Assembly: GCF_006345805.1 (NCBI RefSeq)
Contig: NC_043007.1
Coordinates: forward strand, 30,318,001-30,382,000
Direction: 5' to 3'
Origin: Octopus sinensis
Taxonomy: Eukaryota
Length of the DNA: 64,000 nucleotides
Position numbers and translations under genes: made by a program. The notes under the pieces are model-generated. The model made no database searches and was not told the DNA's origin. It was given only the letters and a program-made list of their open reading frames with translations. Shown piece after piece: positions 3,562 through 64,000 of this stretch. How positions within the stretch are numbered: position 1 is the stretch's first letter; each line of letters begins with the position of its first letter.

Positions 3562-3773
3562 CCAACACACACAAGAATTATATCCTGCAATCAACAGACA
3601 CAATTCCAGACAAAAGAAAAATCATCATTGTTCCCGTTACGACCTACATTCATGCTTCCATCACAAAAACATGCAGCTTCTTTGGTCCTCTTCTTTCTTT
3701 TTAAAATTGTCTCTTTCAAACATACGTTGAAATCAACGGGAGCGACCATCATATATATATATATATATTATAT

Positions 3774-3807
<34 letters not shown>

Positions 3808-3820
3808 CATACATATATAC

Positions 3821-4290
3821 ACATATAAAAGTAAATAAATGGTACAACGAAGTACCGATATTTACTGGAAAATAGCGATCGTAATAAATACGACGCTACT
3901 GTATAGCTTCAATGCGTATGTACTAGCAAAGACGTGTGTGTGCAACAAACATGAAAAAAATTTGTCTTACCTCTAGGAAGAACATCTGAAAAATGAAAAA
4001 CCTAGAAACGGATAATGCAGGACCGGTTTCAGACTCTTCAAATACGTTTGACAACGTAGATTTGATTTGTCTTCATCAGCTGCATATACCTAGACAAAAT
4101 TTCAAATGTTGCCACATCTATGCCAGTACACTCGTCTGAACGCCAAAACGTTAACAGAACGAGAACAGTGAAGAAGTTTCAATGAAAATAGTAAATCAAT
4201 ACGAAAGTATTGCTTTCCAGTAAAAGATAGCCCGTAAGGGTAAAATTATACATATAAAAGTAAATAAATGGTACAACGAAGTACCGATAT
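3821..4290 (-). mobile_element. Retrozyme-like / Penelope pLTR-like unit (429-bp period, 41-bp terminal direct repeat) carrying the hammerhead
   Basis: acatataaaagtaaataaatggtacaacgaagtaccgatat is identical at 3821-3861 and 4250-4290; no ORF; flanked by (TA)n and (TACA)n. Confidence 0.6.
4011..4090 (-). ncRNA. Type I hammerhead ribozyme (complete core, long stem II, palindromic minimal stem III, GUC cleavage site)
   Basis: Minus strand reads GGUAU AUGCAG CUGAUGA AGAC AAA UCAAA UC UACGUU GUCA AACGUA UUUGA AGA GUCU GAAAC CG GUC CUGCAU UAUC. Stem I AUGCAG/CUGCAU, core CUGAUGA...GAAA, stem II AGAC/GUCU + UCAAA/UUUGA + UACGUU/AACGUA, stem III ACCGGU. Confidence 0.88.
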
Positions 4291-4358
4291 ATACATACAT
4301 ACATACATACATACATACATACATACATACATACATACATACATACATACATACATAC
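4290..4358. repeat. (TACA)n microsatellite
   Basis: Directly visible. Confidence 0.97.
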
Positions 4359-4495
4359 AATGGGCTTCTTTCAGTTTCTGTCTATCAGATCCACTCACAA
4401 GGCTTTAGTTTGCTCCTGGCCATAGTAGAAGTAACTTGCCAAAAATACCACGGGTTTGGACGCAAAGTTCTGGCTCCACAGCCACTCCTGCGCCT
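4359..4495 (-). mobile_element. tRNA-derived SINE family B, 5' part
   Basis: Reverse complement aggcgcaggagtggctgtgg...gtgagtggatctgatagacagaaactgaaagaagccc matches the full copy at 33641. Confidence 0.85.
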
Positions 4496-6911
4496 ATTTG
4501 TCTAACAATGTCAGACTCTACTTAAATGCCCGTCAGAATAATCTAACAAATACCGTTGTTGTTATTGCTTAACCCTGGTTAATCCTGATTAATCCCGTAT
4601 AAGATCAACAACTTGCTTCAGTAATGACCGCTCCATCCTTATTTAGAAAACAAAAAGATCCATCTAGAACACGAGAATATAAAATTGTATTTCATTTTCT
4701 CAGGACGGAAAGTGGCGCTATTTGAGATTTAATTAAGGTTTACAACCGGTTGAAGTGCCATGGGCAGGACACCTTCACCTGGTCCAGTAAGAACCATGTT
4801 TAGATACTCCAAGACGAACAAATGGCAAGTGAAACCTCAATGTTCCTTCGTTTGAAGAAACACCAATCTCAGTAAATCATTGCATATCGGAAATAACCCT
4901 GTTTTGTGATCGATGGCTGTAATTATACAATATTGATTTAGTTGTAGGCTATAAGTAAATACCGATATAGGGAAGACTGTGTGTTTGACAAGTTGCTTCG
5001 TAAGCACGTGGTTTTGGAGTCAGTGCCATAGCGCGGCGCCTTGGGCTAGTGCTTTCAAATATAACCGCGACCTTATCAATTCCTTGTGAGTAAATAATTA
5101 ATAACTACAAAACCCGTCGCACACACACACATACATCTATATTTTTATATACCACTTTCGAAGTTGAGCAATTTTGATTCATAAAACTTTCATTGACAAC
5201 TTGTCTATTATTCCTGAGAAATCTCTCCGATGATCACAACATGGGAATCATTTATTGTTGAGAGTGAACATGAATTTGAATTAGAGGAAAGAGCAAATTA
5301 AAATCGATTTTATACATTTACAATTATTTTACATATGTGTCTGTGTCTGTCTGTCTATCTATCTATCTATCTATCTATCTATTATTTTATTCTCTTATCC
5401 GTTTTTGCCTGAAGGCTGCAGCCATGCTGTGCAGCTGTAGCATCGTCAGTGTGTACACATTTTCAATGGCCAATCTTATGTGATTGGCTTTTGTTGAAGG
5501 AGGGAGTTCGAAGCAGCTGCCCTCGTTTGAGTCTCCTCCCGTGATATAGATTAATGTGGGACCTTGGATAGCAGGGGGTCAAATTGTTTCTTAAAAATAA
5601 ATTCAACATGGAGCTTGTGTTAGAATCTAGAATATTACGCTATTTACCTTTAGAAAATCTCTCATAAGGACTCGTGGTGCAATAAAAGACATACGTAATT
5701 ATATGGCTGGCAGACGAGAATTTACTACGGCCGTTCCGACTGCCTGATCACATCATTTCACCTAGCTGTGGGATGCACAGTGACACTTGCCCAGCAGCGA
5801 GATTCTCGTTTGTCAACGATATAAATACGTGTGCTTTTATGCACAACGGAGATATTCTTTTAAGGGAAATAACGCAGTATTCTGTGTCCTATGTCACGAT
5901 GTTCTCTTATATATTTCATGAAATATTGATGATATTTACTGCTGTGACAGAACTTATTCAACACAGAAGACATTTAAATTGCGTGAAGCATCAATATTGT
6001 ATTACCTCTTGTAACTTAATAGTTTATTATCGCGAGTGTATATAAGCTAAGTATGTAATTGGGTAAATTTGAATTTCTCATATTTATTTTCTGGCTGACG
6101 CCGATCTCATTTGTGTCTTAAATAATGCAATAAGTTTGCAGAAATACCATTGTGTCCCATAAATATTTATTTTAATAGTAACAGATTGCATTGCTACTTT
6201 TAAAATTCGCTTAGTCTTGAGAATATTTTATTAATTGTGTATCGCTATGGATTCCGAGTGTATGAATAGAAGTAGTCGATTGTGTATACGCATACATGTA
6301 TGATATATATATATATATACATATATAAAGGATATATATTCACATATATATACACGTGTAAATGTAGAATTTATATTTATTACACACACACATGTATATA
6401 GTACATATGAACAAATTTTACATCTACGTGTGTATATGTGTGCATATATACCTTATATATATGTATATATATATATATATATATAGTGTGTGTGTGTGTG
6501 TGATGTGAATTTAGGGAAATGAATCCCATAAACCTCAACAAATTTGTTATAAATGGAGAAGAGAAAGTATTTAAAGTTTAAGAGAATTTTTATTCATGCA
6601 GACGATCATTCCGAACAGCGATATTAAAATCATGCAAATTCATGGTTGAATGGAAGTAATTAATTTAGTTTAATTTAATTTAATTATATATCAATGTTCT
6701 CCACAGTGCAAGAAGTATAAACAGAAAAATATTATAAAGGACTTGATAAAGGAAATAGCAGAGAATGATTTCGGATATTCACATTTTTGCTTATGAGAAA
6801 AGAAGAAATGTGAGTCTGGTTAGGTATAAACGAAAACTAAGGCAACTAACGGTTATTTGAAAATATAAGTGAAAAAGGTTTTAGGAAACGTTCCCTCTAT
6901 AGAAGATAAGT

Positions 6912-6956
<45 letters not shown>

Positions 6957-6996
6957 GTGGTACAACAAAGCACAAATGTTTACTGGAAATACCAGT

Positions 6997-7034
<38 letters not shown>

Positions 7035-18259: not shown

Positions 18260-20457
18260 ATGAAAACTCACAGTTTATTGTGCTGTGTATGATGGTAAGT
18301 GTCAGCTGTCCACAGCCAGTAGACTAAGGGGACACTTGTTTACTAGTCATGTTTCAAGAACACTGCGAAGAATTCAATGCTCATTTTTCTAAGTGTTCTA
18401 CCTTCACACTTGCACCAATCTTTTTCAGCCATGTTGGTAGTTGAGTGCTGATACTTCTAATTGCACCAATTACTATTGGTATCACGTCTAATCTCCCCAT
18501 TCACCACAACCTTCGTATTTCCCTCTTTAAATGTTCATAGTTGTTTATTTCTTCTTCTTTCACATTGATTCTGTTATCACCGGGGTATGCTCTGTCGATT
18601 ATCATATAAGTTCTTTCTTTTTTTATTCACCACAACAATGTCCGGTTTCCGATGTCAGATCAGGTGTAAGCACCAGATCATTACATTCCACAGGATTTTG
18701 CAATTCTCATTCTCGGTGACTCCTTCTGGGGGGTTTTCTCATAACACATCTTTGCTCTTTGTAGGTCGTGATTTCCTCACAATTCCCAGTGGATCATTCT
18801 TGTCACATTGTCATGCGTCGTTTGTTTTTGCATTGCGCCAACTTCGGTCATTCGATAACGATATGCCATACCGTGTCACTCTTCTCTCCACATTTGTGAC
18901 TATCGGTCGTGTTGTCTATTCTGCACGACCTTTACTGTCCTCGTGCTCTAAATTCTTCCTATTTCAACTTTCAAGGGATTCTATTCTTTTTATTTCTTGT
19001 CCTCTTTCTTTACGATCCTGGAATCAAACGGGTCGAATAGAAAGCAAATTCGCTTTTACTTATTTATAATTGTTATGTCCGGTCTAATATTTTCTAACTC
19101 TTTATCTGAACAGAAAAGTCCTACAAAATTTCTCCGACTCCAGTACTCTTTCGGCGTGTTGCTTGTACCATGTGTTTCCAGCATCAAATCCCCATTTCTG
19201 GCACAGTTTCCTGTGTAAAAACATTTACAACCTGGTCGTGCCTCTATTTCTTATATTCTTCCTGTGCCAGGTTGGGGCATTCTGTCACAATGTGTGCCAC
19301 TGTCTCGTTCCATGTTTCACAGGCTCTACTTTTTTCTGACACTTACTCTCTCTCTCTATAGCTTTTCTCAAATTATGTTTGTATCACTTGATCTTGGACT
19401 GCTACAATTAGATTCTCTGTTTCTTTTTGTAATTGTCCCTTTTTTAAGCAAGCCCAGGATATTGTTCCACCTACATCTTCAGTGACTCTCCAAAATTGGC
19501 CATGCAGCAGTTTTTCTTCAACCTGTCTGATGTGCTCTCCTTGTATTTCATTCTTGTTATTTTATCTTATTTCGCGCTTCATCACCTGTTCTTTCTTAAC
19601 TACCTTTAATAGTTTTTCTGTGTTGTTTTGTAAATACTCTACTAGGCTTTTTCTTTCTACCTGTACACATTCTTCTATTTCTGTTAAACCTCTTCGACCC
19701 TGGTCTCTCCTCAAGTACAGCCAGTTGATATCAGCTTTCAGATGGTGGGCTCCGTATATTGTTAAAAACTTTCTAGTTTTTCTGTCAAGTTCCTTTGCAT
19801 CGTTTTTGGTCCAGTCTATAATTCCAGCTCCAAATCTGATTAAGGGTACTGCTCTTATTGCTTCAATGAGAGCTTTTAATTCAGCTTTGACTGCAATAAT
19901 TTTCTCTTTGTGTACTCCCTAGTGGGGATTTGTTTCATTTCTTCACTTTTTATTTTGTCTGCTTCCAGTTTTCCCAAGTACTTACACCACCGTCCTTTCC
20001 CAACTGCGCTCCGCTCTCATTGTTTGCCCTTTTGGTATTTCACTTCCCTGGTTTCTTTCGAATCTTCCTCGTTCATTTTCAATATAGTGCACCTTTCTAT
20101 GTCAAATTCGATACCTACGTCATTTAAGAAAATGCGGATATGTTCAGGATTTTCAAACTGTTTCTCATTTTTCCCATAAACCTTTATATCATCCTTAAAA
20201 AGGAGATGATTTATCTAAATATTTCCTTTTCCCAAATCGTAATTTTAACTTTTCGTAGTATCATAGTGAGTGGTGCCATGACCAGTACGAACTGGAATGG
20301 AGATAAGCTATCACCTTGGAATATTCCATGTCTCATGTTCACACTTCCGAGGTTTTGGTTTCCTCTAATCAATTCAGTATTCCAATGTTTCGTACTTTCA
20401 TTAAACATTTCCTCCATGTTTTTGCTATTCCAAACATGCTCATTGTCTTATTTATCC
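18260..20457 (-). mobile_element. 5'-truncated R4/Dong-clade non-LTR retrotransposon (RT C-half plus restriction-like endonuclease), degraded
   Basis: Minus strand: GIFQGDSLSP; INHLLFKDDIKVY (YxDD equivalent); AVPLIRFGAGIIDWT; KILWN..HRKPDIVVVNKKERTYMIIDxAYPGDNR..KEEE..YEHLKREIRRLW. Flanked by TAA repeats on both sides. Confidence 0.88.
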
Positions 20458-25060: not shown

Positions 25061-25496
25061 TTCACGTCCCATAATATTGTCATTACAAGGACAACTCTGG
25101 CCAAATGGTATTCGACAAAACTGTCTCGATTCTGTTCCAATTCCTGTTCATCTTGTTTAAAGTCTATGAACCAGAAATATTCCTAATATATTAAAATGAA
25201 TGTTATTTTAGTTTTCATGGAAGAAAATTTCTGCATTTTCACAGATTTTCTCCTCATCCTTTTCATGTGTGTCTATGTATGTATGTATGTATGTTTGTAT
25301 GTATGTACCTACCTATCTATCCCTATCTATTTATTTGTCTGTCTGTCTGTCTCTCTCCCCATCTATATAACGCACACACTCACACAATATATATACGTTT
25401 GAACTCTTCCGGATGGGATGATTTTTGAAAATTTTTACATTACTATTTCTTGTAGGCATAGTCATACTTAGAACCTAGTGTTGGAACTCAACACAC

Positions 25497-26008
25497 ATGC
25501 GCTTCAGAGAAAGCATTGGTCGTGTACAGAGCGTAATAAGAGATTATACAAATGGCAAAGAAACAAGAAACCACGTAATGAACTTCACTAGCTTACAGCT
25601 GTTTCAGCGAAGACTTCAACCAATGTCCCTCTGCATACGCATATATGCCCAAATTTATCCAAGTCTTCATATTTCTGGAGTGGCTTTTCCCCTTCAAACT
25701 CGATACTAAATTTTGTTGATGGTTTCCATCTATAGAAATGCTGTCCTAAATAAATTTGCTCTTCATTTTGAAAGCTATAACGAAGCTATGACAAAATGTA
25801 GTATCGAGTCTGAAGGGGAAAAGCCACTCCAGAAATATGTAGACTTGGATAAATTTGTGCATAATATACTTATACAGTGGAACATAGGTTGAAGTCTTAG
25901 CAGAAACAGCTGTAAGCTAGTGAAGCTAGCTACGTGGTTTCTTGTTTCCTTGTCATGTGTATAATCTCTTACTACGCTCTGTACACAAGCACTCAGTTGT
26001 GAGTGCAT
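25497..26008. repeat. Long inverted repeat / fold-back (MITE-like), ~195-bp arms, ~75-bp spacer
   Basis: 25522-25716 is the reverse complement of 25791-25986; the ORF track shows homologous translations on opposite strands (VQSVIRDYT.GKETRNHV vs VQSVVRDYTHDKETRNHV). Confidence 0.9.
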
Positions 26009-26165
26009 TGCAGCCTATTGCAGAACCAGCTGTAAAGCTAATAATGTTCAGAACACAGATGTTTATTCTTTATGAATTATATAATTTGTTATATGATATA
26101 TATGTGTGTGTATCTATCTATCTATCACACATAAATACATAAACACACACACACACACACACACA

Positions 26166-26449: not shown

Positions 26450-26900
26450 TATATATTATATATAAGTATATATGTATGTATATAAGTATACATATCTATG
26501 TATATAAGTATAGATAAGTATATATGTGTGTATATATATATGTATGTAAATATATATAAGTATATATATATATGTATGTACATATATATAATATATATAT
26601 ATGTATGTACATATATATAAGTATATATATATGTATGTACATATATATAAGTATATATATATGTATGTACATATATATAAGTATATATATGTATGTACAT
26701 ATATATAAGTATATATATATATATGTATGTACATATATATAAGTATATATATATATATATATATATGTATATAAATATATAAGTATATATGTATATGTAT
26801 ATGTATATATATATAAGTATATATGTACAAATGTATATAAGTATATATATATATGCACGTATATATGTATATATGTATTATATATATATAATATATATAC
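26450..26900. repeat. TA-rich minisatellite (tatatataagtatatatatatgtatgtaca-like unit)
   Basis: Directly visible tandem units. Confidence 0.9.
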
Positions 26901-26981
26901 ATACACATATATACACATATTTATACATACACACACACGTACGTATATATGTATGTATGTATGCATTCATGTGTGTATGTA

Positions 26982-27025
<44 letters not shown>

Positions 27026-28294: not shown

Positions 28295-29185
28295 ATCATG
28301 GAATAGGGGAAAAGACAAGAAGGAAATTCAAAGAGAGCAAGTAGATTGAAGAGAATCTTTGCTTGATCACTTTCTGAAAGTCACTGAGGATGTGTGTGTA
28401 ACAAAACCCTGGGTTTGATTGAAAATGAGGCAATTAAAAAAAAAGAAACAAACGAATAGCCTTATTATAGCGATTCAAGGTCAAACGTTAAAAACAAACG
28501 ACTTCTGAGAATCGAGAGATGTCAGCAAAATGTAGTGTATGTGAAATTTAGGATGAAACAATGGCACATATCGTTGCAGGATTTCTCAAGTTGGCTCAGG
28601 GAGGATATAGGAAATGGAGGCATGGCCAAGTTGTGAAAAGTTTGCACTGGAAGCTTTGTCAGAATGGAGGATTTGAAGCTGAAAGCAAATGGTTTGATCG
28701 TCAGGTCGAAAGAGCGTTTTGATTCGAAGAAATGCAAGATTTTATGGGATTTCCCTATTCAAACGGATAAGAAGCTAGAAAATAATAAACCAGGCATAAC
28801 AATAATAGGCAAGAAAACGTGGAGTTGCTTACTAAACGATCCACCATGTCCGTTTGATTCCAGGATTTTAAAGAAAGTTGAAGAAAAGAAAAAAAACAAC
28901 TCAAACCTTTAAAACTTGCAATAGCGAGAATTTGGATTATTAAAATGGTAAAGGTTGTCTTGTAATAACCGGTGCATTAGGGACTGTGAATAGTGGTTTG
29001 GACAAATGATTGAAGGAGGCAGGAATAGAATGTTCTGTAGAGCTTCTGAAGAAAGTTTGTCTTTTCGAGACAGGAAGGATTATCAGGAGGTTTTTAAGCA
29101 CTTGAAAGATTATTTAAAGCCAGTGGACATCTATAGGTTACACGTAATAACCCGCCACCCACATTAATTCTAGCAGGAATGAGAA
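28295..29185 (+). mobile_element. R4/Dong-clade LINE 3' fragment (CCHC region plus restriction-like endonuclease), degraded
   Basis: TNSLIIAIQGQTLKTN; CSVCEI*DETMAHIVAG..LAQGGYRKWRHGQVVKSLHWKLC; KCKILWDFPIQTDKKLENNKP..TII..C.L.D..CPFD. Confidence 0.88.
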
Positions 29186-33640: not shown

Positions 33641-34058
33641 AGGCGCAGGAGTGGCTGTGTGGTAAGTAGCTTGCTAACCAACCACATGGTTCCGGGTTCA
33701 GTCCCACTGCGTGGCATCTTGGGCAAGTGTCTTCTGCTATAGTTCCGGGCCGACCAATGCCTCGTGAGTGGATTTGGTAGACGGAAACTGAAAGAAGCCT
33801 GTCGTATATATGTATATGCATATATATGCATGTGTGTGTTTGTGTGTCTGTGTTTGTCCCCCTAGCATTACTTGACAACCGATGCTGGTGTGTTTACGTC
33901 CCCGTCACTTAGCGGTTCGGCAAAAGAGACCGATAGAATAAGTACTGGGCTTACAAAAAAATAAGTCCCGGGGTCGATTTGCTCGACTAAAGGCGGTGCT
34001 CCAGCATGACCGCAGTCAAATGCCTGAAACAAGTAAAAGAGTAAAAGAGTAAAGAGAG
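33641..34058 (+). mobile_element. tRNA-derived SINE family B, full length
   Basis: A-box tggctgtgtgg, B-box ggttcagtccc, internal TA/TG tract, 3' cagcatgaccgcagtcaaatgcctgaaacaagtaaaagag tail. Confidence 0.93.
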
Positions 34059-35639: not shown

Positions 35640-35966
35640 TTGGATATACATACGTACATACATATATATATGTGCATGTATATATATGTGCATGTATATA
35701 TATGTGCATATATATATATACGTGCATATATATATATATACGTGCATATATATATATACACGTGCATATATATATATATACATGCACATATATATATATA
35801 TACATGCACATATATATATATATACATGCACATATATATATATATATTATATATATATATATATATATACATGCATATATATATATACATGCATATATAT
35901 ATATATACAAGCATGCATACATACATACATGAATACGCACATGACTACATACATACATAAATACAC

Positions 35967-38866: not shown

Positions 38867-38954
<88 letters not shown>

Positions 38955-40308
38955 ACATGTATATATGTATACACACATATAGATATATATATATGTGTTG
39001 TGTGTGTGTGTGTATACATGTATATATGTATACATGTATATATGTATACACACATACATATAAAAATGAAAAGAATATTGAATATGTGCGTGTATAAAAC
39101 GACCTTCGCAATGTCACATTTCCAACACTGAACACCACTTCTCTGAAAATAAGAGTTTCATCTGAAATGTTATTTGCTTAATATTTACTTAACTAAGTAC
39201 ATGGTTTGCACGCGAGAGAGGGTGATGTGGAAAAACAAACGTTTTCAACCACTTAGAGAGAATTTTAAGGAATGGCAAACCGCAATCAAAATGAACTTTT
39301 AAGTGGTCAAATATGTCCTAAACTTATTTAAGCTTATCGAAAGCATTTTTATTTTACAAGATTGCTTCGCGTGCGTAGCATATAGTTAGTTCTGGTCTGG
39401 CAACTAGAGCACGTCGTCCGTGAGTAATTCCTAAAATTTCTAATAAGAAACCGAAAACTGTTAGTCATTTCGTAGTTTTCCGTTTGGCATCTGGTTCTGA
39501 TGAGAGCATAAAGAGCTCGAAATGTATATATTGTGCATTGGTGGTGCTCCAGAATAGCTTTGGTGTTTTACACGTTTGCTTAAAGCGAGAAAGTTTTTCA
39601 CCGTGGCAAACCGCAGTGAAAAGGGCATTTTTGCTGCTCAAATATTTCCCAAGCACATTGAAACGGAACGAAAAGTCAGTTTAATCAGCTAATTTTAATT
39701 ATTTGATACATTGATTTGTATTTAGATTTTCCAATAAATCTCACATTATTAGCACACTTTCTTCGAAAATTTTCTCATCACCTGGTTTTCGTTTTCATTC
39801 TTCAACGCTTCGGTCAACTACATACCTCACTCAACCATAATACTAATCAGCTACCTTTTCAAAATTCTTATCATTTCCTTCCCTGTACATGAATTTTACA
39901 GAGACCCTTCTCCTTCCTCATGTCAGTTGTTTTCTCTCAGTTTTTTCCTTCTCTATTCCCACATATCCTACCTTTTCTACAAACATTCTCTCGACTCTCG
40001 GAACATTAAAAGTTCAACGAAATATTAAAAGTGCGTCAGTAAAGGGCGGTGGGCTCATCTATTTTAGCCTTCAGTATTTATAGATTCCTCGGTGATATAC
40101 GTTTATCGTTGAACAATGGCGAATGTTTTTGTTGTTAAGTTCACTGCTATCCCGCTGGTTTATTTGCAGCTAACTTCCATATCTATATAGAAGCTATATT
40201 ACTATCTGCCAATTACGAACACCCTCTGGAGCTGTAAAATTCTCGCTCCTCCTTTTCTTTCTTTCTTTGTGTGAGTATACCTCTTTCTGTCTGTTGTATG
40301 TATGTATA

Positions 40309-41544: not shown

Positions 41545-42245
41545 TTCATTATAAATTTATTTCATCTGCCTTAGTACCGGGCATCCTCTGGAGGCCAAGA
41601 GTAGCAAGGGCACTTTCGTTTTGCTATGCATGCTAACGATATCACCGCATTTATTCCATTTTAGATGGAGAGTGCTTTCCGTAGTATTATGGGCTGGACT
41701 CATCAAGGTTATCTTTTGTAGTTGACGGAGATCGGAGTTACCAGGGAGTTGCTTAATATACTTCTCAGCTCCCTTCTTTATCATTTCCAACACACAAATT
41801 ATTACTGGTGTTATCGTAGCATTAAGCTTCCTCATTTTTGTGATTTCAATTTGCAGATCTTTATAGTGAGAAAACTTTTCGTATTCTTTTCTTGAGACTT
41901 TTTGATCTTGTGGGACAGACATATCCATTAACAGACAAGTTCCTCTGTTGTGTTCCTTGATCACAATGTCTGATCGATTGGAATCAATTTTTTTGTCTGT
42001 ATTGGGAAGTTCCAAAGGATGGTGACACCCTCACCATTTACTCCATCCTCTGGATGGTACCTGTACCACTTATCATGGGATTTAATTTTGTAGTATTTAC
42101 AAGCATTCCAGTGGATGTACTGCTCTAGTCTGTCATGTCTTATGAGGTACTCCTTTTCAGCGAGGACTGAGCAGCCAGAAACAACAGGATCAATTGTCTC
42201 TGTGAATTTTCCGCACGATGGGTCGGATCCACCTTTAAGGACGTT
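41545..42245 (-). mobile_element. R4/Dong-clade LINE 3' fragment (CCHC-like region plus RLE)
   Basis: ETIDPVVSGCSVLAEKEYLIRHDRLEQYIHWNACKYY..KWYRYHPE..TILWNFP / TDKKIDSNRSDIVIKEH..CLLMDMSVPQDQKVSRKEYEKFSHYKDLQIEI; AAT-rich tail follows. Confidence 0.9.
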
Positions 42246-42284
42246 TGCATGGTAGTTGCCTAATAGTGGTTTTATCTCTAATTC

Positions 42285-42321
<37 letters not shown>

Positions 42322-49705: not shown

Positions 49706-50092
49706 ACTTGTTTCAGTCATCAAACTGCGCCCATGCTGGAGTACCTCCTTGAAGAATTTTAGTCGCTCGAATCGACTCCATTTCTTATTGATTTTTGTAA
49801 AGCCTGGTATTTATTCTATCGGTTTCATTTTGTCGAACTGCTGAGTTGTGGTGACGTAAGCACACCAACACCTGTGGAGGACAAACACTGACACAAATGC
49901 ACACAAACAAACACACACACATTATATGTATACGACGGGCTTCTTTTAGTTTCCGTCTACTAAATCCACTCACTAGGCTTTGGTAGGCCTGAAGCTATAA
50001 TAGAAAACACGTGCCCAAGGTAGCATGCAGTGGGACTGAACCCGGAACCATGTGGTTGGTGAACTTCTTTTCACACAGCCATGTCTGCGCTT
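49706..50092 (-). mobile_element. SINE family B, full length
   Basis: Reverse complement of the 33641-34058 consensus along its length. Confidence 0.9.
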
Positions 50093-50650: not shown

Positions 50651-50812
50651 GACGGGCTCCTTTCAGTTTTTGTCTACCAAATCCACTCACAAGGCTGTAA
50701 TAGGCACGAGGCTATAGTAGAAGACACTTACCCAAGGTGCCACGTAACAGGACTGAACCCAGAACCATGTGGTGAGAAGCATGTTTCTCACCACATAGCC
50801 GCTCCTGCACCT
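50417..50812 (-). mobile_element. SINE family B, full length
   Basis: Reverse complement of the 33641-34058 consensus along its length. Confidence 0.9.
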
Positions 50813-53097: not shown

Positions 53098-53260
53098 ACG
53101 ACGGGCTTCTTTGTTTCCATGCACCAAATCTGCTCACAAGGGTTTGGTCGGCCCGACGCCATAGTAGGAGATAACTGCCCAAGGTGCCACGCAGTGGGAC
53201 TGAACACAGGACCATATCGCTGGGAAGCAAATTTCTTACCACAAAGCCACGCCTGCGCCT
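53098..53260 (-). mobile_element. SINE family B, 5' half
   Basis: cgacgggcttc...ccaaggtgccacgcagtgggactgaac...agccacgcctgcgcct. Confidence 0.9.
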
Positions 53261-54938: not shown

Positions 54939-55489
54939 AATAAGTTAAGTTAAGTTAAGTTTATTTTTTGGCTCAAAAAGCAAAAAGCAAGGCCATGTAG
55001 GGGAGCATGGAGTTATGTACAGGGTGGTGTTCATGCAAAGAGTTCAGGCCATTTGTGGTCAAGGGAGACTTTGAACCGAGCGGTCGTCGGCATCTTCACT
55101 ATCTCGTCCGGCAGCTTATTCCACGGATCCGCAACCCGGACGGAGAAAGCCCCTCTCCTTCGATTGAGATGAAATCGTCACAGATAGAGCTTTTCGGAGT
55201 GACCCCGCAGCCGACGCTCTGGAGCAGGAGTGAAGAACAGCTCTTTCGAGAGGTTACACTTTCCGCTTATGATGTTGTGAGCGAGAATGAGATCACCACG
55301 GTGTCGTCGTTTTTCTAGAGAATAAAGGTCGAGCGTCTTCAGCCTTTCTTCATAGGACAAATGCTTGATACCAAGAACCATGCGGGTGGCCAGCTTCTGG
55401 ACTCTTTCGAGATGATGTATGTCTTTGAGGAGATAAGGAGAAGAGGCTTGAATCCCGTACTCCAATATGGGTCTCACCAGCGTGACATA
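54939..55489 (-). mobile_element. 5'-truncated CR1/L2-group LINE 3' end with (AACTT)n tail
   Basis: YVTLVRPILEYGIQASSPYLLKDIHHLERVQKLATRMVLGIKHLSYEERLKTLDLYSLEKRRHRGDLILAHNII; tail taagttaagttaagttaag on the + strand. Confidence 0.92.
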
Positions 55490-55842
55490 AGAAGAAACAA
55501 AGATATAAAGCAAGAACGAAAAATCAAAGAAATACTTTTACATAGACTGACCAAGTATTTCTACCCCGGCTGAATCTATGTGGCCCCTCCAGGCACAGAA
55601 ACATGCAACACCCAATTCTAGTAGATTCGAGCAGCTCATAATGAAAGGCTTCAGCGCAAGGGCAAAACGTTCGGCTTTGTCCAGGAATTGAACGCAAGAT
55701 ATTTAAGATCGCGAACTTAGTAACCATAACAAAAGACCACGTCCCATTATGCACATGTACGCGCATATATATATATATATATAAATAAATATATATATAT
55801 GTCTTTCTCTCTCTCTCTTTCCGCCCTTCTCTCTCCCCCTCA

Positions 55843-56504: not shown

Positions 56505-56654
56505 CACAACAGGCTTCTTTCAGTTTCCGTCTACCAAATCCACTCACAAGGCTTTGGTCGGCCCGAGGCTATAGTAGAAGACACCTGCCCAAGGTGCCAC
56601 GCAGTGGGACTGAACCCGGAACCATGTGGTCGGTAAGCAAGCTACTTACCACAC
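56360..56654 (-). mobile_element. SINE family B
   Basis: Clear head and body match (ccaaatccactcacaaggctttggtcggcccgaggc...). Confidence 0.92.
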
Positions 56655-56664
56655 ATTACATATT

Positions 56665-56806
56665 GGCGCAGGTGTGGCTGTGTGGTAAGACGCTTGCCAC
56701 ATGGTTCCGAGTTCAGTCCCACTGCGTGACACGTTAGGCAACACTCTCCTACTGGCCAAATCATTGAGAGTGGATCTGATAGTTGGAAACTGAAAGAAGC
56801 CCGTCG
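56665..56806 (+). mobile_element. SINE family B, 5' half (head-to-head with the previous copy)
   Basis: ggcgcaggtgtggctgtgtggtaag...gttcagtcccactgcgtg...gaaactgaaagaagcccgtcg. Confidence 0.88.
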
Positions 56807-63631: not shown

Positions 63632-64000
63632 AGGCGGAGGCGTGGCTGTGTGGTAAGAAGCTTGCTTCTCGATCACATGGTTCCGGGTTCAGTCTCACCG
63701 TAAGGCATCTGGGGCATGTGACTTATAAGATATTTTTGGGTCGACCAGTGCCTTGTGGGTGAATTTGGTAGACGGAAACTGAAGGAAGCACGTCGTATAC
63801 AGACACACACACACACACGCACACACACACACACGCATATATGTATGTATGTATATATGTGTGTATGTGTGTCTGTGTTTGTCTCCCAATAGCGCTTGAC
63901 AACTGGTGTTGGAGTGTTTCCATCCTTGTAACTTAGTGGTTCGGCAAAAGCGAACCGATTGAATAAGTCCCAGTTGACTACTGGAGTCAATACGATCGAC
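63632..64000 (+). mobile_element. SINE family B, runs off the window end
   Basis: aggcggaggcgtggctgtgtggtaagaagc...ggttcagtc...gacggaaactgaagg...cttgacaactgg. Confidence 0.9.

What the first reader, a model, noticed from the sequence alone, without database searches (positions are those of the whole stretch)
4011..4090. Complete type I hammerhead ribozyme with an unusually long stem II and a dimer-type stem III
Seen: all conserved core residues are present on the minus strand (CUGAUGA, GAAA, A15.1-U16.1, GUC cleavage triplet). Stem I is 6 perfect bp and extends past a bulged U (GGUA/UAUC) and a 6-nt bulge (CUA/UAG). Stem II is a three-segment 15-bp hairpin capped by GUCA. Stem III is only AC-CG-GU, the palindrome ACCGGU. 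Known: minimal type I hammerheads with diminished palindromic stem III occur in Penelope-like elements and metazoan non-LTR retrozymes and cleave as dimers (Cervera and de la Pena 2014, 2020; Lunse et al. 2017). Inference: a probably functional self-cleaving RNA cutting between 4021 and 4020 on the minus strand. The long stem II is atypical. I cannot check whether this family has already been described in octopus.
Basis: partly seen in the sequence, partly recalled or inferred. Interest (0 to 1): 0.9.

Follow-up and report, generated by a model that had tools for sequence, protein, structure and literature searches.

The report
Hammerhead ribozyme in octopus retrozyme-like repeat
An octopus genome window holds a genuine-looking self-cleaving hammerhead RNA motif at the tip of a strongly folded 429-base repeat unit, which looks like a single-copy relic of the ribozyme-carrying mobile elements (retrozymes) already known in many animals, so it is real but fairly ordinary.

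Summary
The described motif is on the minus strand at 4093-4002. It has the core CUGAUGA, GAAA with A15.1-U16.1, and C17 at 4021. Stem I is 6 bp, stem II is 15 bp in three segments (42 nt), and helix III is 1 bp closing the palindromic loop CCGG. A permissive descriptor finds only this site in 64 kb, against 0.007 per shuffled window. Rfam HH9 aligns end to end at 27 bits, below its gathering score of 52, mainly because of a 31-nt insertion in stem II. Two copies cofold into the classical double hammerhead with a 6-bp ACCGGU:ACCGGU helix III.

New context: the ribozyme caps a 35-bp rod inside a 429-nt, 35% GC, non-coding unit. The unit folds far better than shuffles (z -7.5, and -9.0 with the ribozyme removed). 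It is present as 1.11 copies (48-bp terminal redundancy) inserted in the microsatellite tail of an octopus SINE.

This fits a monomeric non-LTR retrozyme or Penelope-pLTR derivative. Caveats:
- Only one ribozyme copy is present in cis.
- The 10.1-11.1 pair is A-U instead of the usual G-C.
- No homologues could be retrieved, so covariation was not tested.
- Cleavage is untested.

Verdict: new member of a known kind, with an unusual stem II extension. Interest is modest.

The parts
4002..4093 (-).
   Evidence: Sequence read. Only descriptor hit in the window. Rfam HH9 full-length alignment over 4001-4093, 27.2 bits. RNAfold z=-2.66.
4080..4085 (-). Stem I, 5' strand AUGCAG. Pairs with 4015-4020.
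   Evidence: Relative to the HH9 consensus, the distal pair is A-U instead of C-G, changed on both sides.
4073..4079 (-). Catalytic core C3-A9, CUGAUGA
4031..4072 (-). Stem II, 42 nt. AGAC/GUCU (4 bp; 10.1-11.1 is A-U), internal loop AAA/AGA, UCAAA/UUUGA (5 bp), UC bulge, UACGUU/AACGUA (6 bp), loop GUCA.
   Evidence: Treated by the HH9 model as a 31-nt insertion in loop 2.
4021..4030 (-). GAAA (G12-A15.1, 4030-4027), palindromic loop 3 CCGG (4026-4023), U16.1 (4022), C17 (4021). Predicted cleavage between 4021 and 4020.
   Evidence: ACCGGU forms a 6-bp intermolecular helix III in the cofold minimum-energy structure.
4015..4020 (-). Stem I, 3' strand CUGCAU
4092..4130 (-). Left arm of the rod that extends stem I. 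Pairs with 3919-3967 in helices of 10+7+6+5+7 = 35 bp.
   Evidence: Minimum-energy helices listed. The rod without the ribozyme has z=-7.8.
3919..3967 (-). Right arm of the rod
3970..4008 (-). Side hairpin at the three-way junction next to the ribozyme (UUUCUAGG/CCUAGAGG plus a CAUUU/AGAUG tip)
3866..4294 (-). One 429-nt repeat unit: 35% GC, no ORF longer than 63 codons without a stop, very strongly self-paired
   Evidence: Period from the direct repeat. Fold z=-7.48 on the minus strand and -5.92 on the plus strand. Circular fold z=-8.43 against -1.6 to +1.4 for 8 control windows. z=-8.97 with the ribozyme deleted. ORFs.
4247..4294 (-). Direct repeat copy 1, the start of the unit. Contains the hairpin GGUAC-UUCGUU-GUACC.
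   Evidence: 46/48 identical to 3818-3865. Sequence.
3818..3865 (-). Direct repeat copy 2, the first 48 nt of a second unit. This is the terminal redundancy or 'tail'.
4295..4359 (-). (GUAU)n microsatellite. It is the 3' tail of the upstream SINE and forms the upstream insertion flank.
3751..3817 (-). (UAUG)2(UA)n microsatellite, the downstream insertion flank
4360..4510 (-). Octopus SINE copy whose microsatellite tail received the insertion (context only, not part of the element)
   Evidence: Seven further partial copies (40-92 nt aligned) in the window at 73-87% identity. The three copies whose flank I read in translation carry a variable microsatellite on the same side.
6958..7007 (-). Short second fragment of the same element family, embedded in (TA)n. 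It matches across the junction between unit end and direct repeat (28 of 34 in the core).
   Evidence: Local alignment score 23 exceeds all 200 shuffles, whose maximum is 21.

Best explanation
This is a bona fide hammerhead ribozyme of the canonical metazoan type I kind. It is carried by a roughly 429-nt non-coding, rod-like repeat unit. I read the unit as a monomeric (1.11-unit) copy of a non-LTR retrozyme or Penelope-pLTR-derived non-autonomous retroelement in an octopod genome.

Inferred life cycle, by analogy with coral, mussel and axolotl retrozymes (none of these steps is shown here):
1. At tandem loci of the family, read-through transcripts fold so that two ribozyme copies swap stem I strands and join their ACCGGU palindromes into a 6-bp helix III.
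2. Each copy cuts after GUC (here C17 at 4021), leaving a 5'-OH and a 2',3'-cyclic phosphate.
3. The released 429-nt rod is circularised by a host RtcB-type ligase.
4. The circle is copied by a Penelope-like reverse transcriptase.
5. The copy is inserted at microsatellites, with a slightly more than unit-length product giving the 48-bp terminal redundancy.

The copy in this window sits in the (GTAT)n/(TA)n tail of a SINE and has a single ribozyme. By itself it can at most cut a read-through transcript once, and probably inefficiently. It is most likely a dead-end daughter insertion.

Shown: motif, stems, dimer-compatible fold, unit boundaries, strong structure, microsatellite flanks, octopod origin. 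Inferred: catalysis, circular RNA, mobilising enzyme, family copy number.
For: Motif and significance:
- Sequence and sole descriptor hit.
- HH9 alignment over the full model. It shares UGCAG-CUGAUGA and GAAACC..GGUC-CUGCA with the vertebrate consensus and has a both-sides change in the last stem I pair.

Dimer:
- The cofold minimum-energy structure of two copies is the double hammerhead, -49.9 against 2 x -23.4 kcal/mol. The core is unpaired, whereas the monomer fold sequesters C3-G5.

Unit:
- 48-bp direct repeat with a 429-bp period.
- A separate fragment at 7007-6958 inside (TA)n matches across the junction between unit end and repeat. The repeat is therefore internal to the element and not a target duplication.

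Structure:
- z=-7.5 linear and -8.4 circular, -9.0 without the ribozyme. Controls range from -1.6 to +1.4.
- The ribozyme strand is 16 kcal/mol more stable than its complement and has 9 G-U pairs against 3.

Other features:
- 35% GC and no coding capacity.
- No Penelope RT or endonuclease ORF was apparent by eye in the stop-free fragments listed for 1-31 kb; no domain search succeeded.
- Octopod origin: the best hits of a LINE fragment are Octopus bimaculoides proteins at 70-76% identity.

Literature match:
- Canonical metazoan hammerheads have a 6-bp helix I, a 4-bp helix II and a 1-2-bp helix III with a 2-4-nt palindromic loop, and act as dimers (PMC4209133).
- Retrozymes are repeats of 150-450 bp (RNAs of about 170-400 nt), with GC below 50% and highly self-paired, and are present in molluscs (PMC7229834).
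- Monomer derivatives are common, and retrozymes derive from Penelope pLTRs (bioRxiv 10.64898/2026.07.22.740005).
- Penelope-like elements show partial tandems, a 30-40-bp 'tail' and a microsatellite insertion bias (PMC8557442, PMC11167929).
- Hammerhead_1 hits and Penelope elements are reported in a cephalopod genome (PMC6962438).
Against: - No Rfam hammerhead model reaches its gathering score.
- Only one full unit and one ribozyme are present in 64 kb, with no second full copy.
- No related sequence was found in any searchable collection, so there is no covariation test and no copy-number estimate.
- The 10.1-11.1 pair is A-U, although this is the most conserved pair of the motif after 15.1-16.1 (PMC3088659).
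- A 42-nt stem II is not a described feature of retrozyme hammerheads. It could misplace any loop 1-loop 2 contact.
- No Penelope-like ORF was seen in the window, so the mobilising partner is unidentified.
- Strong structure on both strands is also what any DNA inverted repeat would give.
Confidence: 0.72

Rival explanations
1. This is a solo pseudo-LTR or a heavily truncated autonomous Penelope-like element. On this reading the ribozyme belongs to the terminal repeat of a coding element whose RT-endonuclease ORF has been lost or lies outside the unit.
For: - Penelope-like elements carry hammerheads in their pLTRs and form partial tandems with a 30-40-bp tail (PMC4209133, PMC8557442, PMC11167929).
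- They insert in microsatellites, especially (TA)n (PMC8557442).
- Most such hammerheads occur as single motifs from truncated copies (PMC4209133).
- The locus has a 48-bp terminal redundancy and microsatellite flanks.
Against: - No RT or GIY-YIG reading frame was apparent by eye near the ribozyme in the stop-free fragments, and no domain search ran. The microsatellite flanks bound the element at 477 bp.
- Penelope hammerheads are usually minimal, with a 4-5-bp helix I, no helix III and no loop contacts. This one has the canonical 6-bp/4-bp/1-bp layout (PMC4209133).
- The whole unit is a compact rod like retrozyme RNAs.
- The distinction is partly semantic, since retrozymes are proposed to derive from pLTRs.
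Confidence: 0.15
2. This is a domesticated, host-function hammerhead, like the amniote intronic HH9 and HH10. On this reading a single conserved copy in an intron or UTR processes a host transcript.
For: - The best Rfam match is HH9.
- The ribozyme is solitary at this locus.
- Isolated, non-tandem hammerheads exist in mammals (PMC7229834).
Against: - The score is far below the HH9 gathering threshold (27 against 52 bits).
- Helix III lacks the stable HH9 hairpin, so the monomer should be a poor cleaver.
- The locus has the hallmarks of a recent mobile insertion: a 96%-identical terminal redundancy, a position inside a SINE tail, and a second fragment 3 kb away.
- I recognised no host exon in the window. 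What I could identify was microsatellites, SINE copies and LINE fragments.
Confidence: 0.04
3. This is a chance hammerhead-like motif inside an unrelated foldback or inverted-repeat DNA element (for example a MITE-like hairpin) and has no RNA-level function.
For: - The consensus is simple, and chance matches are expected in large genomes (PMC3088659). My descriptor rate of 0.0067 per 64 kb implies a few hundred per 2-3 Gb.
- Both strands of the unit fold strongly.
- No Rfam gathering hit.
- A relaxed descriptor already gives chance hits elsewhere, at 29046.
Against: - The match goes beyond the descriptor. Stem I and the helix III flanks are sequence-identical to the vertebrate HH9 consensus, with E=1.5e-4 locally.
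- All 10 pairs of stems I and II nearest the core are Watson-Crick.
- Loop 3 is palindromic, giving an exact double-hammerhead minimum-energy structure.
- The motif sits precisely at the apex of the rod, with stem I continuing into it.
- Unit size, GC content, partial tandem and microsatellite target all match retrozymes independently of how the site was picked.
- The ribozyme strand is the more stable one and is richer in G-U pairs.
Confidence: 0.07

Closest known systems
Metazoan non-LTR retrozymes (Cervera and de la Pena 2020, PMC7229834), for example the Mytilus galloprovincialis 350-390-bp repeats and the axolotl HHR_Amex1 330-bp repeats
   Same: - Type I hammerhead.
- Unit of a few hundred bp (429 here).
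- Low GC (35%) and no ORF.
- Highly self-paired predicted RNA.
- Helix III of one base pair closed by a palindromic tetraloop, exactly as described for HHR_Amex1, implying dimeric cleavage.
- Mollusc host.
   Different: - Only 1.11 units and a single ribozyme at this locus, so it is a monomer derivative and not an array.
- Stem II carries a 28-nt extra hairpin beyond the canonical 4-bp helix.
- The 10.1-11.1 pair is A-U.
- At 429 bp, the unit is a little above the ~170-400 nt given for retrozyme RNAs, though inside the 150-450-bp range given for the genomic repeats.
- Expression and circularity are unknown.
Penelope-like element pLTR hammerheads (Cervera and de la Pena 2014, PMC4209133; Craig et al. 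2021, PMC8557442; Frangieh et al. 2024, PMC11167929)
   Same: - Palindromic, diminished helix III suited to dimers.
- Longer-than-canonical helix II.
- Partial-tandem insertion with a short terminal 'tail'.
- Insertion into microsatellites.
   Different: - No RT or GIY-YIG ORF.
- Helix I is 6 bp and continues into a rod. It is not the 4-5 bp with an ill-defined loop 1 of the Penelope hammerheads.
- One helix III pair and a 4-nt loop are retained.
- The tail is 48 bp, against 30-40 bp.
Rfam RF02275 Hammerhead_HH9 (amniote intronic hammerhead) and the related Xenopus and Schistosoma type I hammerheads
   Same: - Identical UGCAG-CUGAUGA and GAAACC...GGUC-CUGCA segments.
- 6-bp stem I followed by a U/A-rich internal loop.
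- 4-bp proximal stem II followed by A-rich loop nucleotides.
   Different: - 27.2 bits against a gathering score of 52.
- A 31-nt insertion in loop 2.
- The helix III hairpin loop is deleted.
- The distal stem I helix is much shorter.
- It lies in a mobile repeat and not at a conserved intronic position.
Newt satellite 2 and avocado sunblotch viroid double hammerheads (Forster et al. 1988; Epstein and Gall 1987, as reviewed in PMC6155905)
   Same: - Weak helix III.
- Predicted to reach the active fold only when two copies pair.
   Different: - Those are shown biochemically. Here there is only a thermodynamic prediction.
- No second copy is present in cis at this locus.

Membership tests
Hammerhead ribozyme, type I | Unpaired core C3-U4-G5-A6-N7-G8-A9 and G12-A13-A14 | tested here: met
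   CUGAUGA at 4079-4073 and GAA at 4030-4028.
Hammerhead ribozyme, type I | A15.1-U16.1 pair followed by a non-G nucleotide at position 17 (cleavage site) | tested here: met
   A 4027, U 4022, C17 4021, giving the GUC triplet.
Hammerhead ribozyme, type I | Three helices around the core, with helix I open and helices II and III closed | tested here: met
   Helix I is 6 bp, helix II is 4 bp proximal (15 bp in total), and helix III is 1 bp with the CCGG loop. Helix III is marginal in the monomer and 6 bp in the dimer.
Hammerhead ribozyme, type I | Watson-Crick pair at 10.1-11.1, G-C in nearly all natural examples | tested here: inconclusive
   A pair is present, but it is A 4072 with U 4031. PMC3088659 calls this the most conserved pair after 15.1-16.1. 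Natural compensatory variants are reported (PMC2837043). The effect on rate is unknown here.
Hammerhead ribozyme, type I | Score at or above the curated Rfam threshold for a hammerhead model (clan CL00010) | tested here: not met
   No gathering-level hit in the window. The best is HH9 at 27.2 bits against 52. The shortfall is largely the penalties for the stem II insertion and the loop 3 deletion.
Hammerhead ribozyme, type I | Conservation of the core and covariation of the stems among homologues | not testable with these tools
   No homologue was retrievable: metagenome, viral and prokaryotic genome scans gave only chance hits or none, and protein-route searches were negative or spurious. The only comparison available is one both-sides change against the HH9 consensus.
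Hammerhead ribozyme, type I | Site-specific self-cleavage | not testable with these tools
   Requires transcription and cleavage assays.
Metazoan non-LTR retrozyme | Tandem array (two or more units) of a 150-450-bp repeat, each unit with a type I hammerhead | tested here: not met
   There are 1.11 units and one ribozyme. This corresponds to the 'monomer derivative' class of bioRxiv 10.64898/2026.07.22.740005 and is not an active array.
Metazoan non-LTR retrozyme | Low GC (below about 45-50%), no ORF, no LTR/PBS/PPT | tested here: met
   GC is 0.354. The longest stop-free stretch is 63 codons and is mostly microsatellite. I did not look specifically for PBS or PPT motifs.
Metazoan non-LTR retrozyme | Unit RNA predicted to be highly self-paired | tested here: met
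   z=-7.48 linear and -8.43 circular with 62% of bases paired. z=-8.97 without the ribozyme.
Metazoan non-LTR retrozyme | Multicopy family in the host genome, expressed as linear and circular RNA | not testable with these tools
   Only one extra 50-nt fragment lies in the window. No octopus assembly or transcriptome is accessible.
Penelope-like element (autonomous) | ORF with a telomerase-like RT and a GIY-YIG endonuclease between pLTRs | tested here: inconclusive
   No such frame was apparent by eye among the stop-free fragments of at least 70 codons that were shown; the listing was cut for about 31-35 kb.
Penelope-like element (autonomous) | Partial-tandem insertion with a 30-40-bp 'tail', and a microsatellite target | tested here: inconclusive
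   There is a 48-bp terminal redundancy between (GTAT)n and (TA)n. This is compatible with the Penelope signature but not specific to it.
Rfam Hammerhead_HH9 | Gathering score, a stable helix III hairpin, and a conserved intronic location in amniotes | tested here: not met
   27.2 bits against 52, the helix III loop is deleted, and the host is an octopod.

The most novel reading that the evidence does not exclude
The unit represents a so far undescribed cephalopod retrozyme family that is transcriptionally active and accumulates as circular RNA of about 429 nt. On this reading its hammerhead has turned loop 2 into an internal loop carrying an extra 11-bp hairpin, a peripheral module that tunes the loop 1-loop 2 contact or binds a host or retroelement protein. 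The family is invisible to standard Rfam annotation because it scores below every gathering threshold.
Probability: 0.3. Interest if true: 0.45.

Novelty: new member of a known kind. Interest (0 to 1): 0.3.

Why it matters
If confirmed, it would add cephalopods to the animals that carry retrozyme-type hammerhead elements. It would also give a natural example of a canonical type I hammerhead that tolerates a large hairpin grafted onto loop 2 and an A-U pair at 10.1-11.1. Both are useful data points for how peripheral elements tune hammerhead folding. It would show that Rfam gathering thresholds miss such variants.

It would not change the general picture. Type I hammerheads with palindromic helix III in AT-rich repeats are known in many metazoan phyla, including molluscs. 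Hammerhead_1 hits and Penelope elements have already been reported in a cephalopod genome (PMC6962438).

Tried and rejected
1. Rfam at gathering thresholds over the whole window gave nothing. Rfam in E-value mode over the whole window was swamped by about 275 microsatellite-driven miRNA matches, so the hammerhead hit fell below the listed 150.
2. Looked for other copies in the window. Exact and 3-mismatch pattern searches and blastn found only the site itself. The first gapped pattern allowed too short a stem II (36 nt against 42).
3. Scanned public collections for relatives.
   - Metagenome contigs gave 7 hits, all in 59-68% GC bacterial contigs without stems, so they are chance hits.
   - Viral contigs gave 0 hits, then 4 chance hits.
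   - Prokaryotic genome contigs gave 0 hits.
4. Tried the protein route to paralogues through spurious ORFs over the ribozyme.
   - Exact look-up found nothing on record.
   - The word-indexed homology search found no candidate.
   - The exhaustive phmmer search returned two unrelated tandem-repeat proteins that score through additive repeats, which I rejected.
5. Fetched two ENA contigs that carry relatives of the window's LINE fragment, hoping for cephalopod DNA with more ribozymes. They contained no convincing hammerhead.
I replaced it with a visual check of stop-free fragments.
7. Considered the 48-bp repeat as a target-site duplication. I rejected this because a separate fragment is contiguous across the junction between unit end and repeat, and because microsatellite continues on both outer sides.
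8. It is possible for the isolated 92-mer, but other pairings out-compete it in the full unit.
9. Literature searches for hammerheads in octopus or cephalopods found no dedicated description. The only mention was the automated count in the giant squid genome paper.
Full report
**1.

On the minus strand, 4093-4002 reads CUA GGUA U AUGCAG CUGAUGA [AGAC AAA UCAAA UC UACGUU GUCA AACGUA UUUGA AGA GUCU] GAAA CCGG U C / CUGCAU UAUC CGUUUC UAG.

- Stem I is AUGCAG 4085-4080 with CUGCAU 4020-4015, six Watson-Crick pairs.
- The core CUGAUGA is 4079-4073. GAAA is 4030-4027.
- A15.1 (4027) and U16.1 (4022) enclose CCGG. C17 is 4021.
- RNAfold recovers stems I and II, with stem II as 4+5+6 bp closed by GUCA. 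The z-score is -2.66.

**2. It is more than chance at the scale of the window**

- A deliberately permissive type I descriptor finds this site and nothing else in 64 kb on both strands. It gives 2 hits in 300 dinucleotide-preserving shuffles, or 0.0067 per window.
- Loosening the descriptor further yields obvious chance hits elsewhere, for example at 29046 with 4-bp stems. This shows where the noise floor lies.
- No Rfam family reaches its gathering score.
- In E-value mode, Hammerhead_HH9 (RF02275) aligns over its whole length to 4093-4001 at 27.2 bits, E=1.5e-4 for the 701 nt searched. By linear scaling this is about 0.014 for the full window. The same scaling is seen for a neighbouring hit.
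- The alignment shows why the score is low: a 31-nt insertion in loop 2 and deletion of the helix III loop.
- It also shows similarity beyond the core. UGCAG-CUGAUGA and GAAACC..GGUC-CUGCA are identical to the vertebrate consensus. The last stem I pair is changed on both sides, from C-G to A-U.
- At genome scale the bare descriptor would give a few hundred chance hits, a point also made by Perreault et al. (PMC3088659). Context is therefore needed.

**3.

The pair that closes stem II (10.1-11.1) is A-U (4072/4031), not G-C. PMC3088659 describes this as the most conserved pair of the motif after 15.1-16.1. Natural compensatory variants at these positions exist in cave-cricket satellite hammerheads (PMC2837043). 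From my own knowledge, G10.1 contributes to a divalent-metal site together with the A9 phosphate, so a rate penalty is plausible. This was not tested.

**4. Helix III is of the dimer type**

- In the monomer, only A15.1-U16.1 can close the CCGG tetraloop. Adding that pair costs energy: -11.4 against -17.4 kcal/mol for the hand-built hammerhead fold.
- The monomer minimum-energy structure instead pairs C3-U4-G5 (4079-4077) with CGG (4025-4023), which sequesters part of the core.
- Cofolding two copies gives -49.9 kcal/mol against 2 x -23.4. The minimum-energy structure is exactly the double hammerhead: stem I strands exchanged between molecules, ACCGGU:ACCGGU as a 6-bp helix III, stems II intramolecular, and both cores unpaired.
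- This is the architecture described for canonical metazoan type I hammerheads: a 6-bp helix I, a 4-bp helix II, and a 1-2-bp helix III with a 2-4-nt palindromic loop (PMC4209133). It is also the one described for axolotl HHR_Amex1 (PMC7229834).
- The ribozyme is therefore canonical and not 'minimal'. Its peculiarity is that loop 2 has become an internal loop (AAA/AGA) carrying an extra 11-bp bulged hairpin.

**5. Surroundings**

The window is from an octopod.

- It is 35% GC and crowded with microsatellites.
- It carries LINE reverse-transcriptase fragments. One of them has its best database matches in Octopus bimaculoides proteins at 70-76% identity.
- It contains several copies of a SINE with variable microsatellite tails.

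On the minus strand the order is:

1. SINE, 4510-4360.
2. Its (GUAU)n tail, 4359-4295.
3. A 48-nt segment, 4294-4247.
4. 381 nt that include the ribozyme.
5. The same 48-nt segment again, 3865-3818 (46 of 48 identical).
6. (UAUG)2(UA)n, 3817-3751.

The period is 429 bp, so the locus holds 1.11 units. The repeat is not a target-site duplication, for two reasons. First, a 50-nt fragment 3 kb away (7007-6958, same strand, embedded in (TA)n) matches continuously across the junction between the end of the unit and the repeat. The core matches at 28 of 34 positions, and the local score of 23 exceeds all 200 shuffles, whose maximum is 21. Second, microsatellite continues on both outer sides. The simplest reading is a 477-bp insertion of slightly more than one unit into the SINE's microsatellite tail.

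**6. The unit is a strongly structured RNA**

| Fold tested | Energy (kcal/mol) | Shuffles | z |
|---|---|---|---|
| Minus strand, linear | -123.4 | -85.5 +/- 5.1 | -7.48 |
| Complement, linear | -107.5 | -76.3 +/- 5.3 | -5.92 |
| Circle opened at the cleavage site | -121.3 | -80.9 +/- 4.8 | -8.43 |
| Unit with the ribozyme removed | -102.9 | -62.5 +/- 4.5 | -8.97 |

- The complement has 3 G-U pairs against 9 on the ribozyme strand.
- In the circular fold, 62% of bases are paired. Eight other 429-nt windows nearby gave z between -1.6 and +1.4.
- The fold is a rod. Arms 4130-4092 and 3967-3919 form 35 bp, capped by a three-way junction with the hammerhead and a side hairpin at 4008-3970. Stem I of the ribozyme continues into the rod.
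- The unit has no coding capacity.
- By eye, no Penelope-type RT or endonuclease frame was apparent near the site among the stop-free fragments listed (the listing was cut for about 31-35 kb). No domain search could be run.

**7. Interpretation**

Every property matches metazoan non-LTR retrozymes as defined by Cervera and de la Pena (PMC7229834):

- a type I hammerhead,
- a unit of a few hundred bp,
- low GC,
- no ORF,
- a highly self-paired RNA,
- a mollusc host.

The exception is that this locus is not an array. It fits the 'monomer derivative' class, proposed to be non-transposing offspring of active retrozymes, in the recent vertebrate survey. That survey also argues that retrozymes derive from Penelope pLTRs (bioRxiv 10.64898/2026.07.22.740005).

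The partial tandem, the short terminal redundancy and the microsatellite target recall the Penelope insertion signature (PMC8557442, PMC11167929). At 48 bp, the redundancy is longer than the 30-40-bp tail described there, so I treat this as compatible but not diagnostic.

The mechanism I propose rests wholly on analogy: double-hammerhead cleavage of multimeric transcripts at array loci, ligation by a host RtcB-type ligase, then reverse transcription and integration by a Penelope-type enzyme. At this locus, the single ribozyme could only cut a read-through transcript once, and probably poorly.

**8. Rivals**

- **Solo pLTR of a coding Penelope element (0.15).** This overlaps with the favoured view. 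It is disfavoured by the canonical hammerhead layout, the tight microsatellite boundaries and the absence of an ORF.
- **Chance motif in a foldback DNA element (0.07).** This is disfavoured by the sequence-level match to HH9, the exact dimer fold, the position at the apex of the rod and the strand asymmetry.
- **Domesticated HH9-like host ribozyme (0.04).** This is disfavoured by the weak helix III and the signs of recent insertion.

**9. What could not be done**

No cephalopod genome or transcriptome is reachable with the tools.

- Pattern scans of metagenomic, viral and prokaryotic collections returned only chance matches or nothing.
- Protein-route tricks failed or gave spurious repeat proteins.
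- Two ENA contigs with related LINEs held no hammerhead.

Conservation, covariation, copy number, expression and cleavage therefore remain untested.

**10. Novelty and score**

- I found no description of hammerheads or retrozymes in octopus.
- However, 235 Hammerhead_1 matches and Penelope elements are reported for the giant squid genome (PMC6962438). Retrozymes are described as widespread 'from molluscs to arthropods' (PMC7229834).
- This is a new member of a known kind, with an unusual stem II extension and a non-consensus 10.1-11.1 pair.
- A specialist would find it unsurprising, so interest is about 0.3.

Noticed in passing
window 4360-4510 (-); also 56512-56601, 50654-50744, 33710-33799, 49937-50018, 53103-53191, 56758-56802, 63750-63789: There are multiple copies (73-87% identical) of a SINE. 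In the copies I read, a variable microsatellite follows as the 3' tail: (GTAT)n, (TA)n or (CA)n(TA)n. From memory it looks like the abundant tRNA-derived octopus SINE. One of these tails is the insertion site of the hammerhead unit.
   Followed up: partly
window 6958-7007 (-): A 50-nt fragment embedded in a (TA)n tract matches the junction region of the hammerhead unit (TTTCCAGTAAA...GTTGTACCA). It includes a small hairpin, GGUAC/GUACC in the main copy and GUGC/GUAC here, which is kept through a one-sided change to a G-U pair. It may be an extremely truncated insertion of the same family.
   Followed up: partly
window 19565-20447 (-), 41560-42287 (-), 55181-55537 (-): These are degenerate non-LTR (LINE-type) reverse-transcriptase fragments. 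The 41.5-kb fragment matches Octopus bimaculoides uncharacterised proteins at 70-76% identity, which fixes the window as octopod. None looks like a Penelope-type RT, but they were not classified.
   Followed up: partly
window about 25480-26015, centre 25674-25833: This is a large inverted duplication. Similar peptides are read on opposite strands at 25479-25706 (+) and 25778-26014 (-). The central 160-nt hairpin gives sub-threshold matches to plant miRNA models (MIR530 at 57.8 bits against a gathering score of 85). It is probably a foldback repeat and not a miRNA.
   Followed up: no
whole window, e.g. 35660-35960, 38920-39065, 26500-27000, 63797-63885: Dense (TA)n, (CA)n and (TATG)n-type microsatellites produce about 275 sub-threshold Rfam matches to mir-297, mir-3149, mir-466 and mir-1277 models. 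These are composition artefacts, and they bury real weak hits in E-value mode.
   Followed up: yes
L008 and L009 (ENA ERZ25072740 contigs): These are low-coverage (3-4x) 34% GC contigs from a metagenome assembly. They carry LINE fragments 51-53% identical to the octopus one, so they are presumably host (invertebrate) DNA in a metagenome. A patatin-domain ORF sits beside RT fragments on L009.
   Followed up: no
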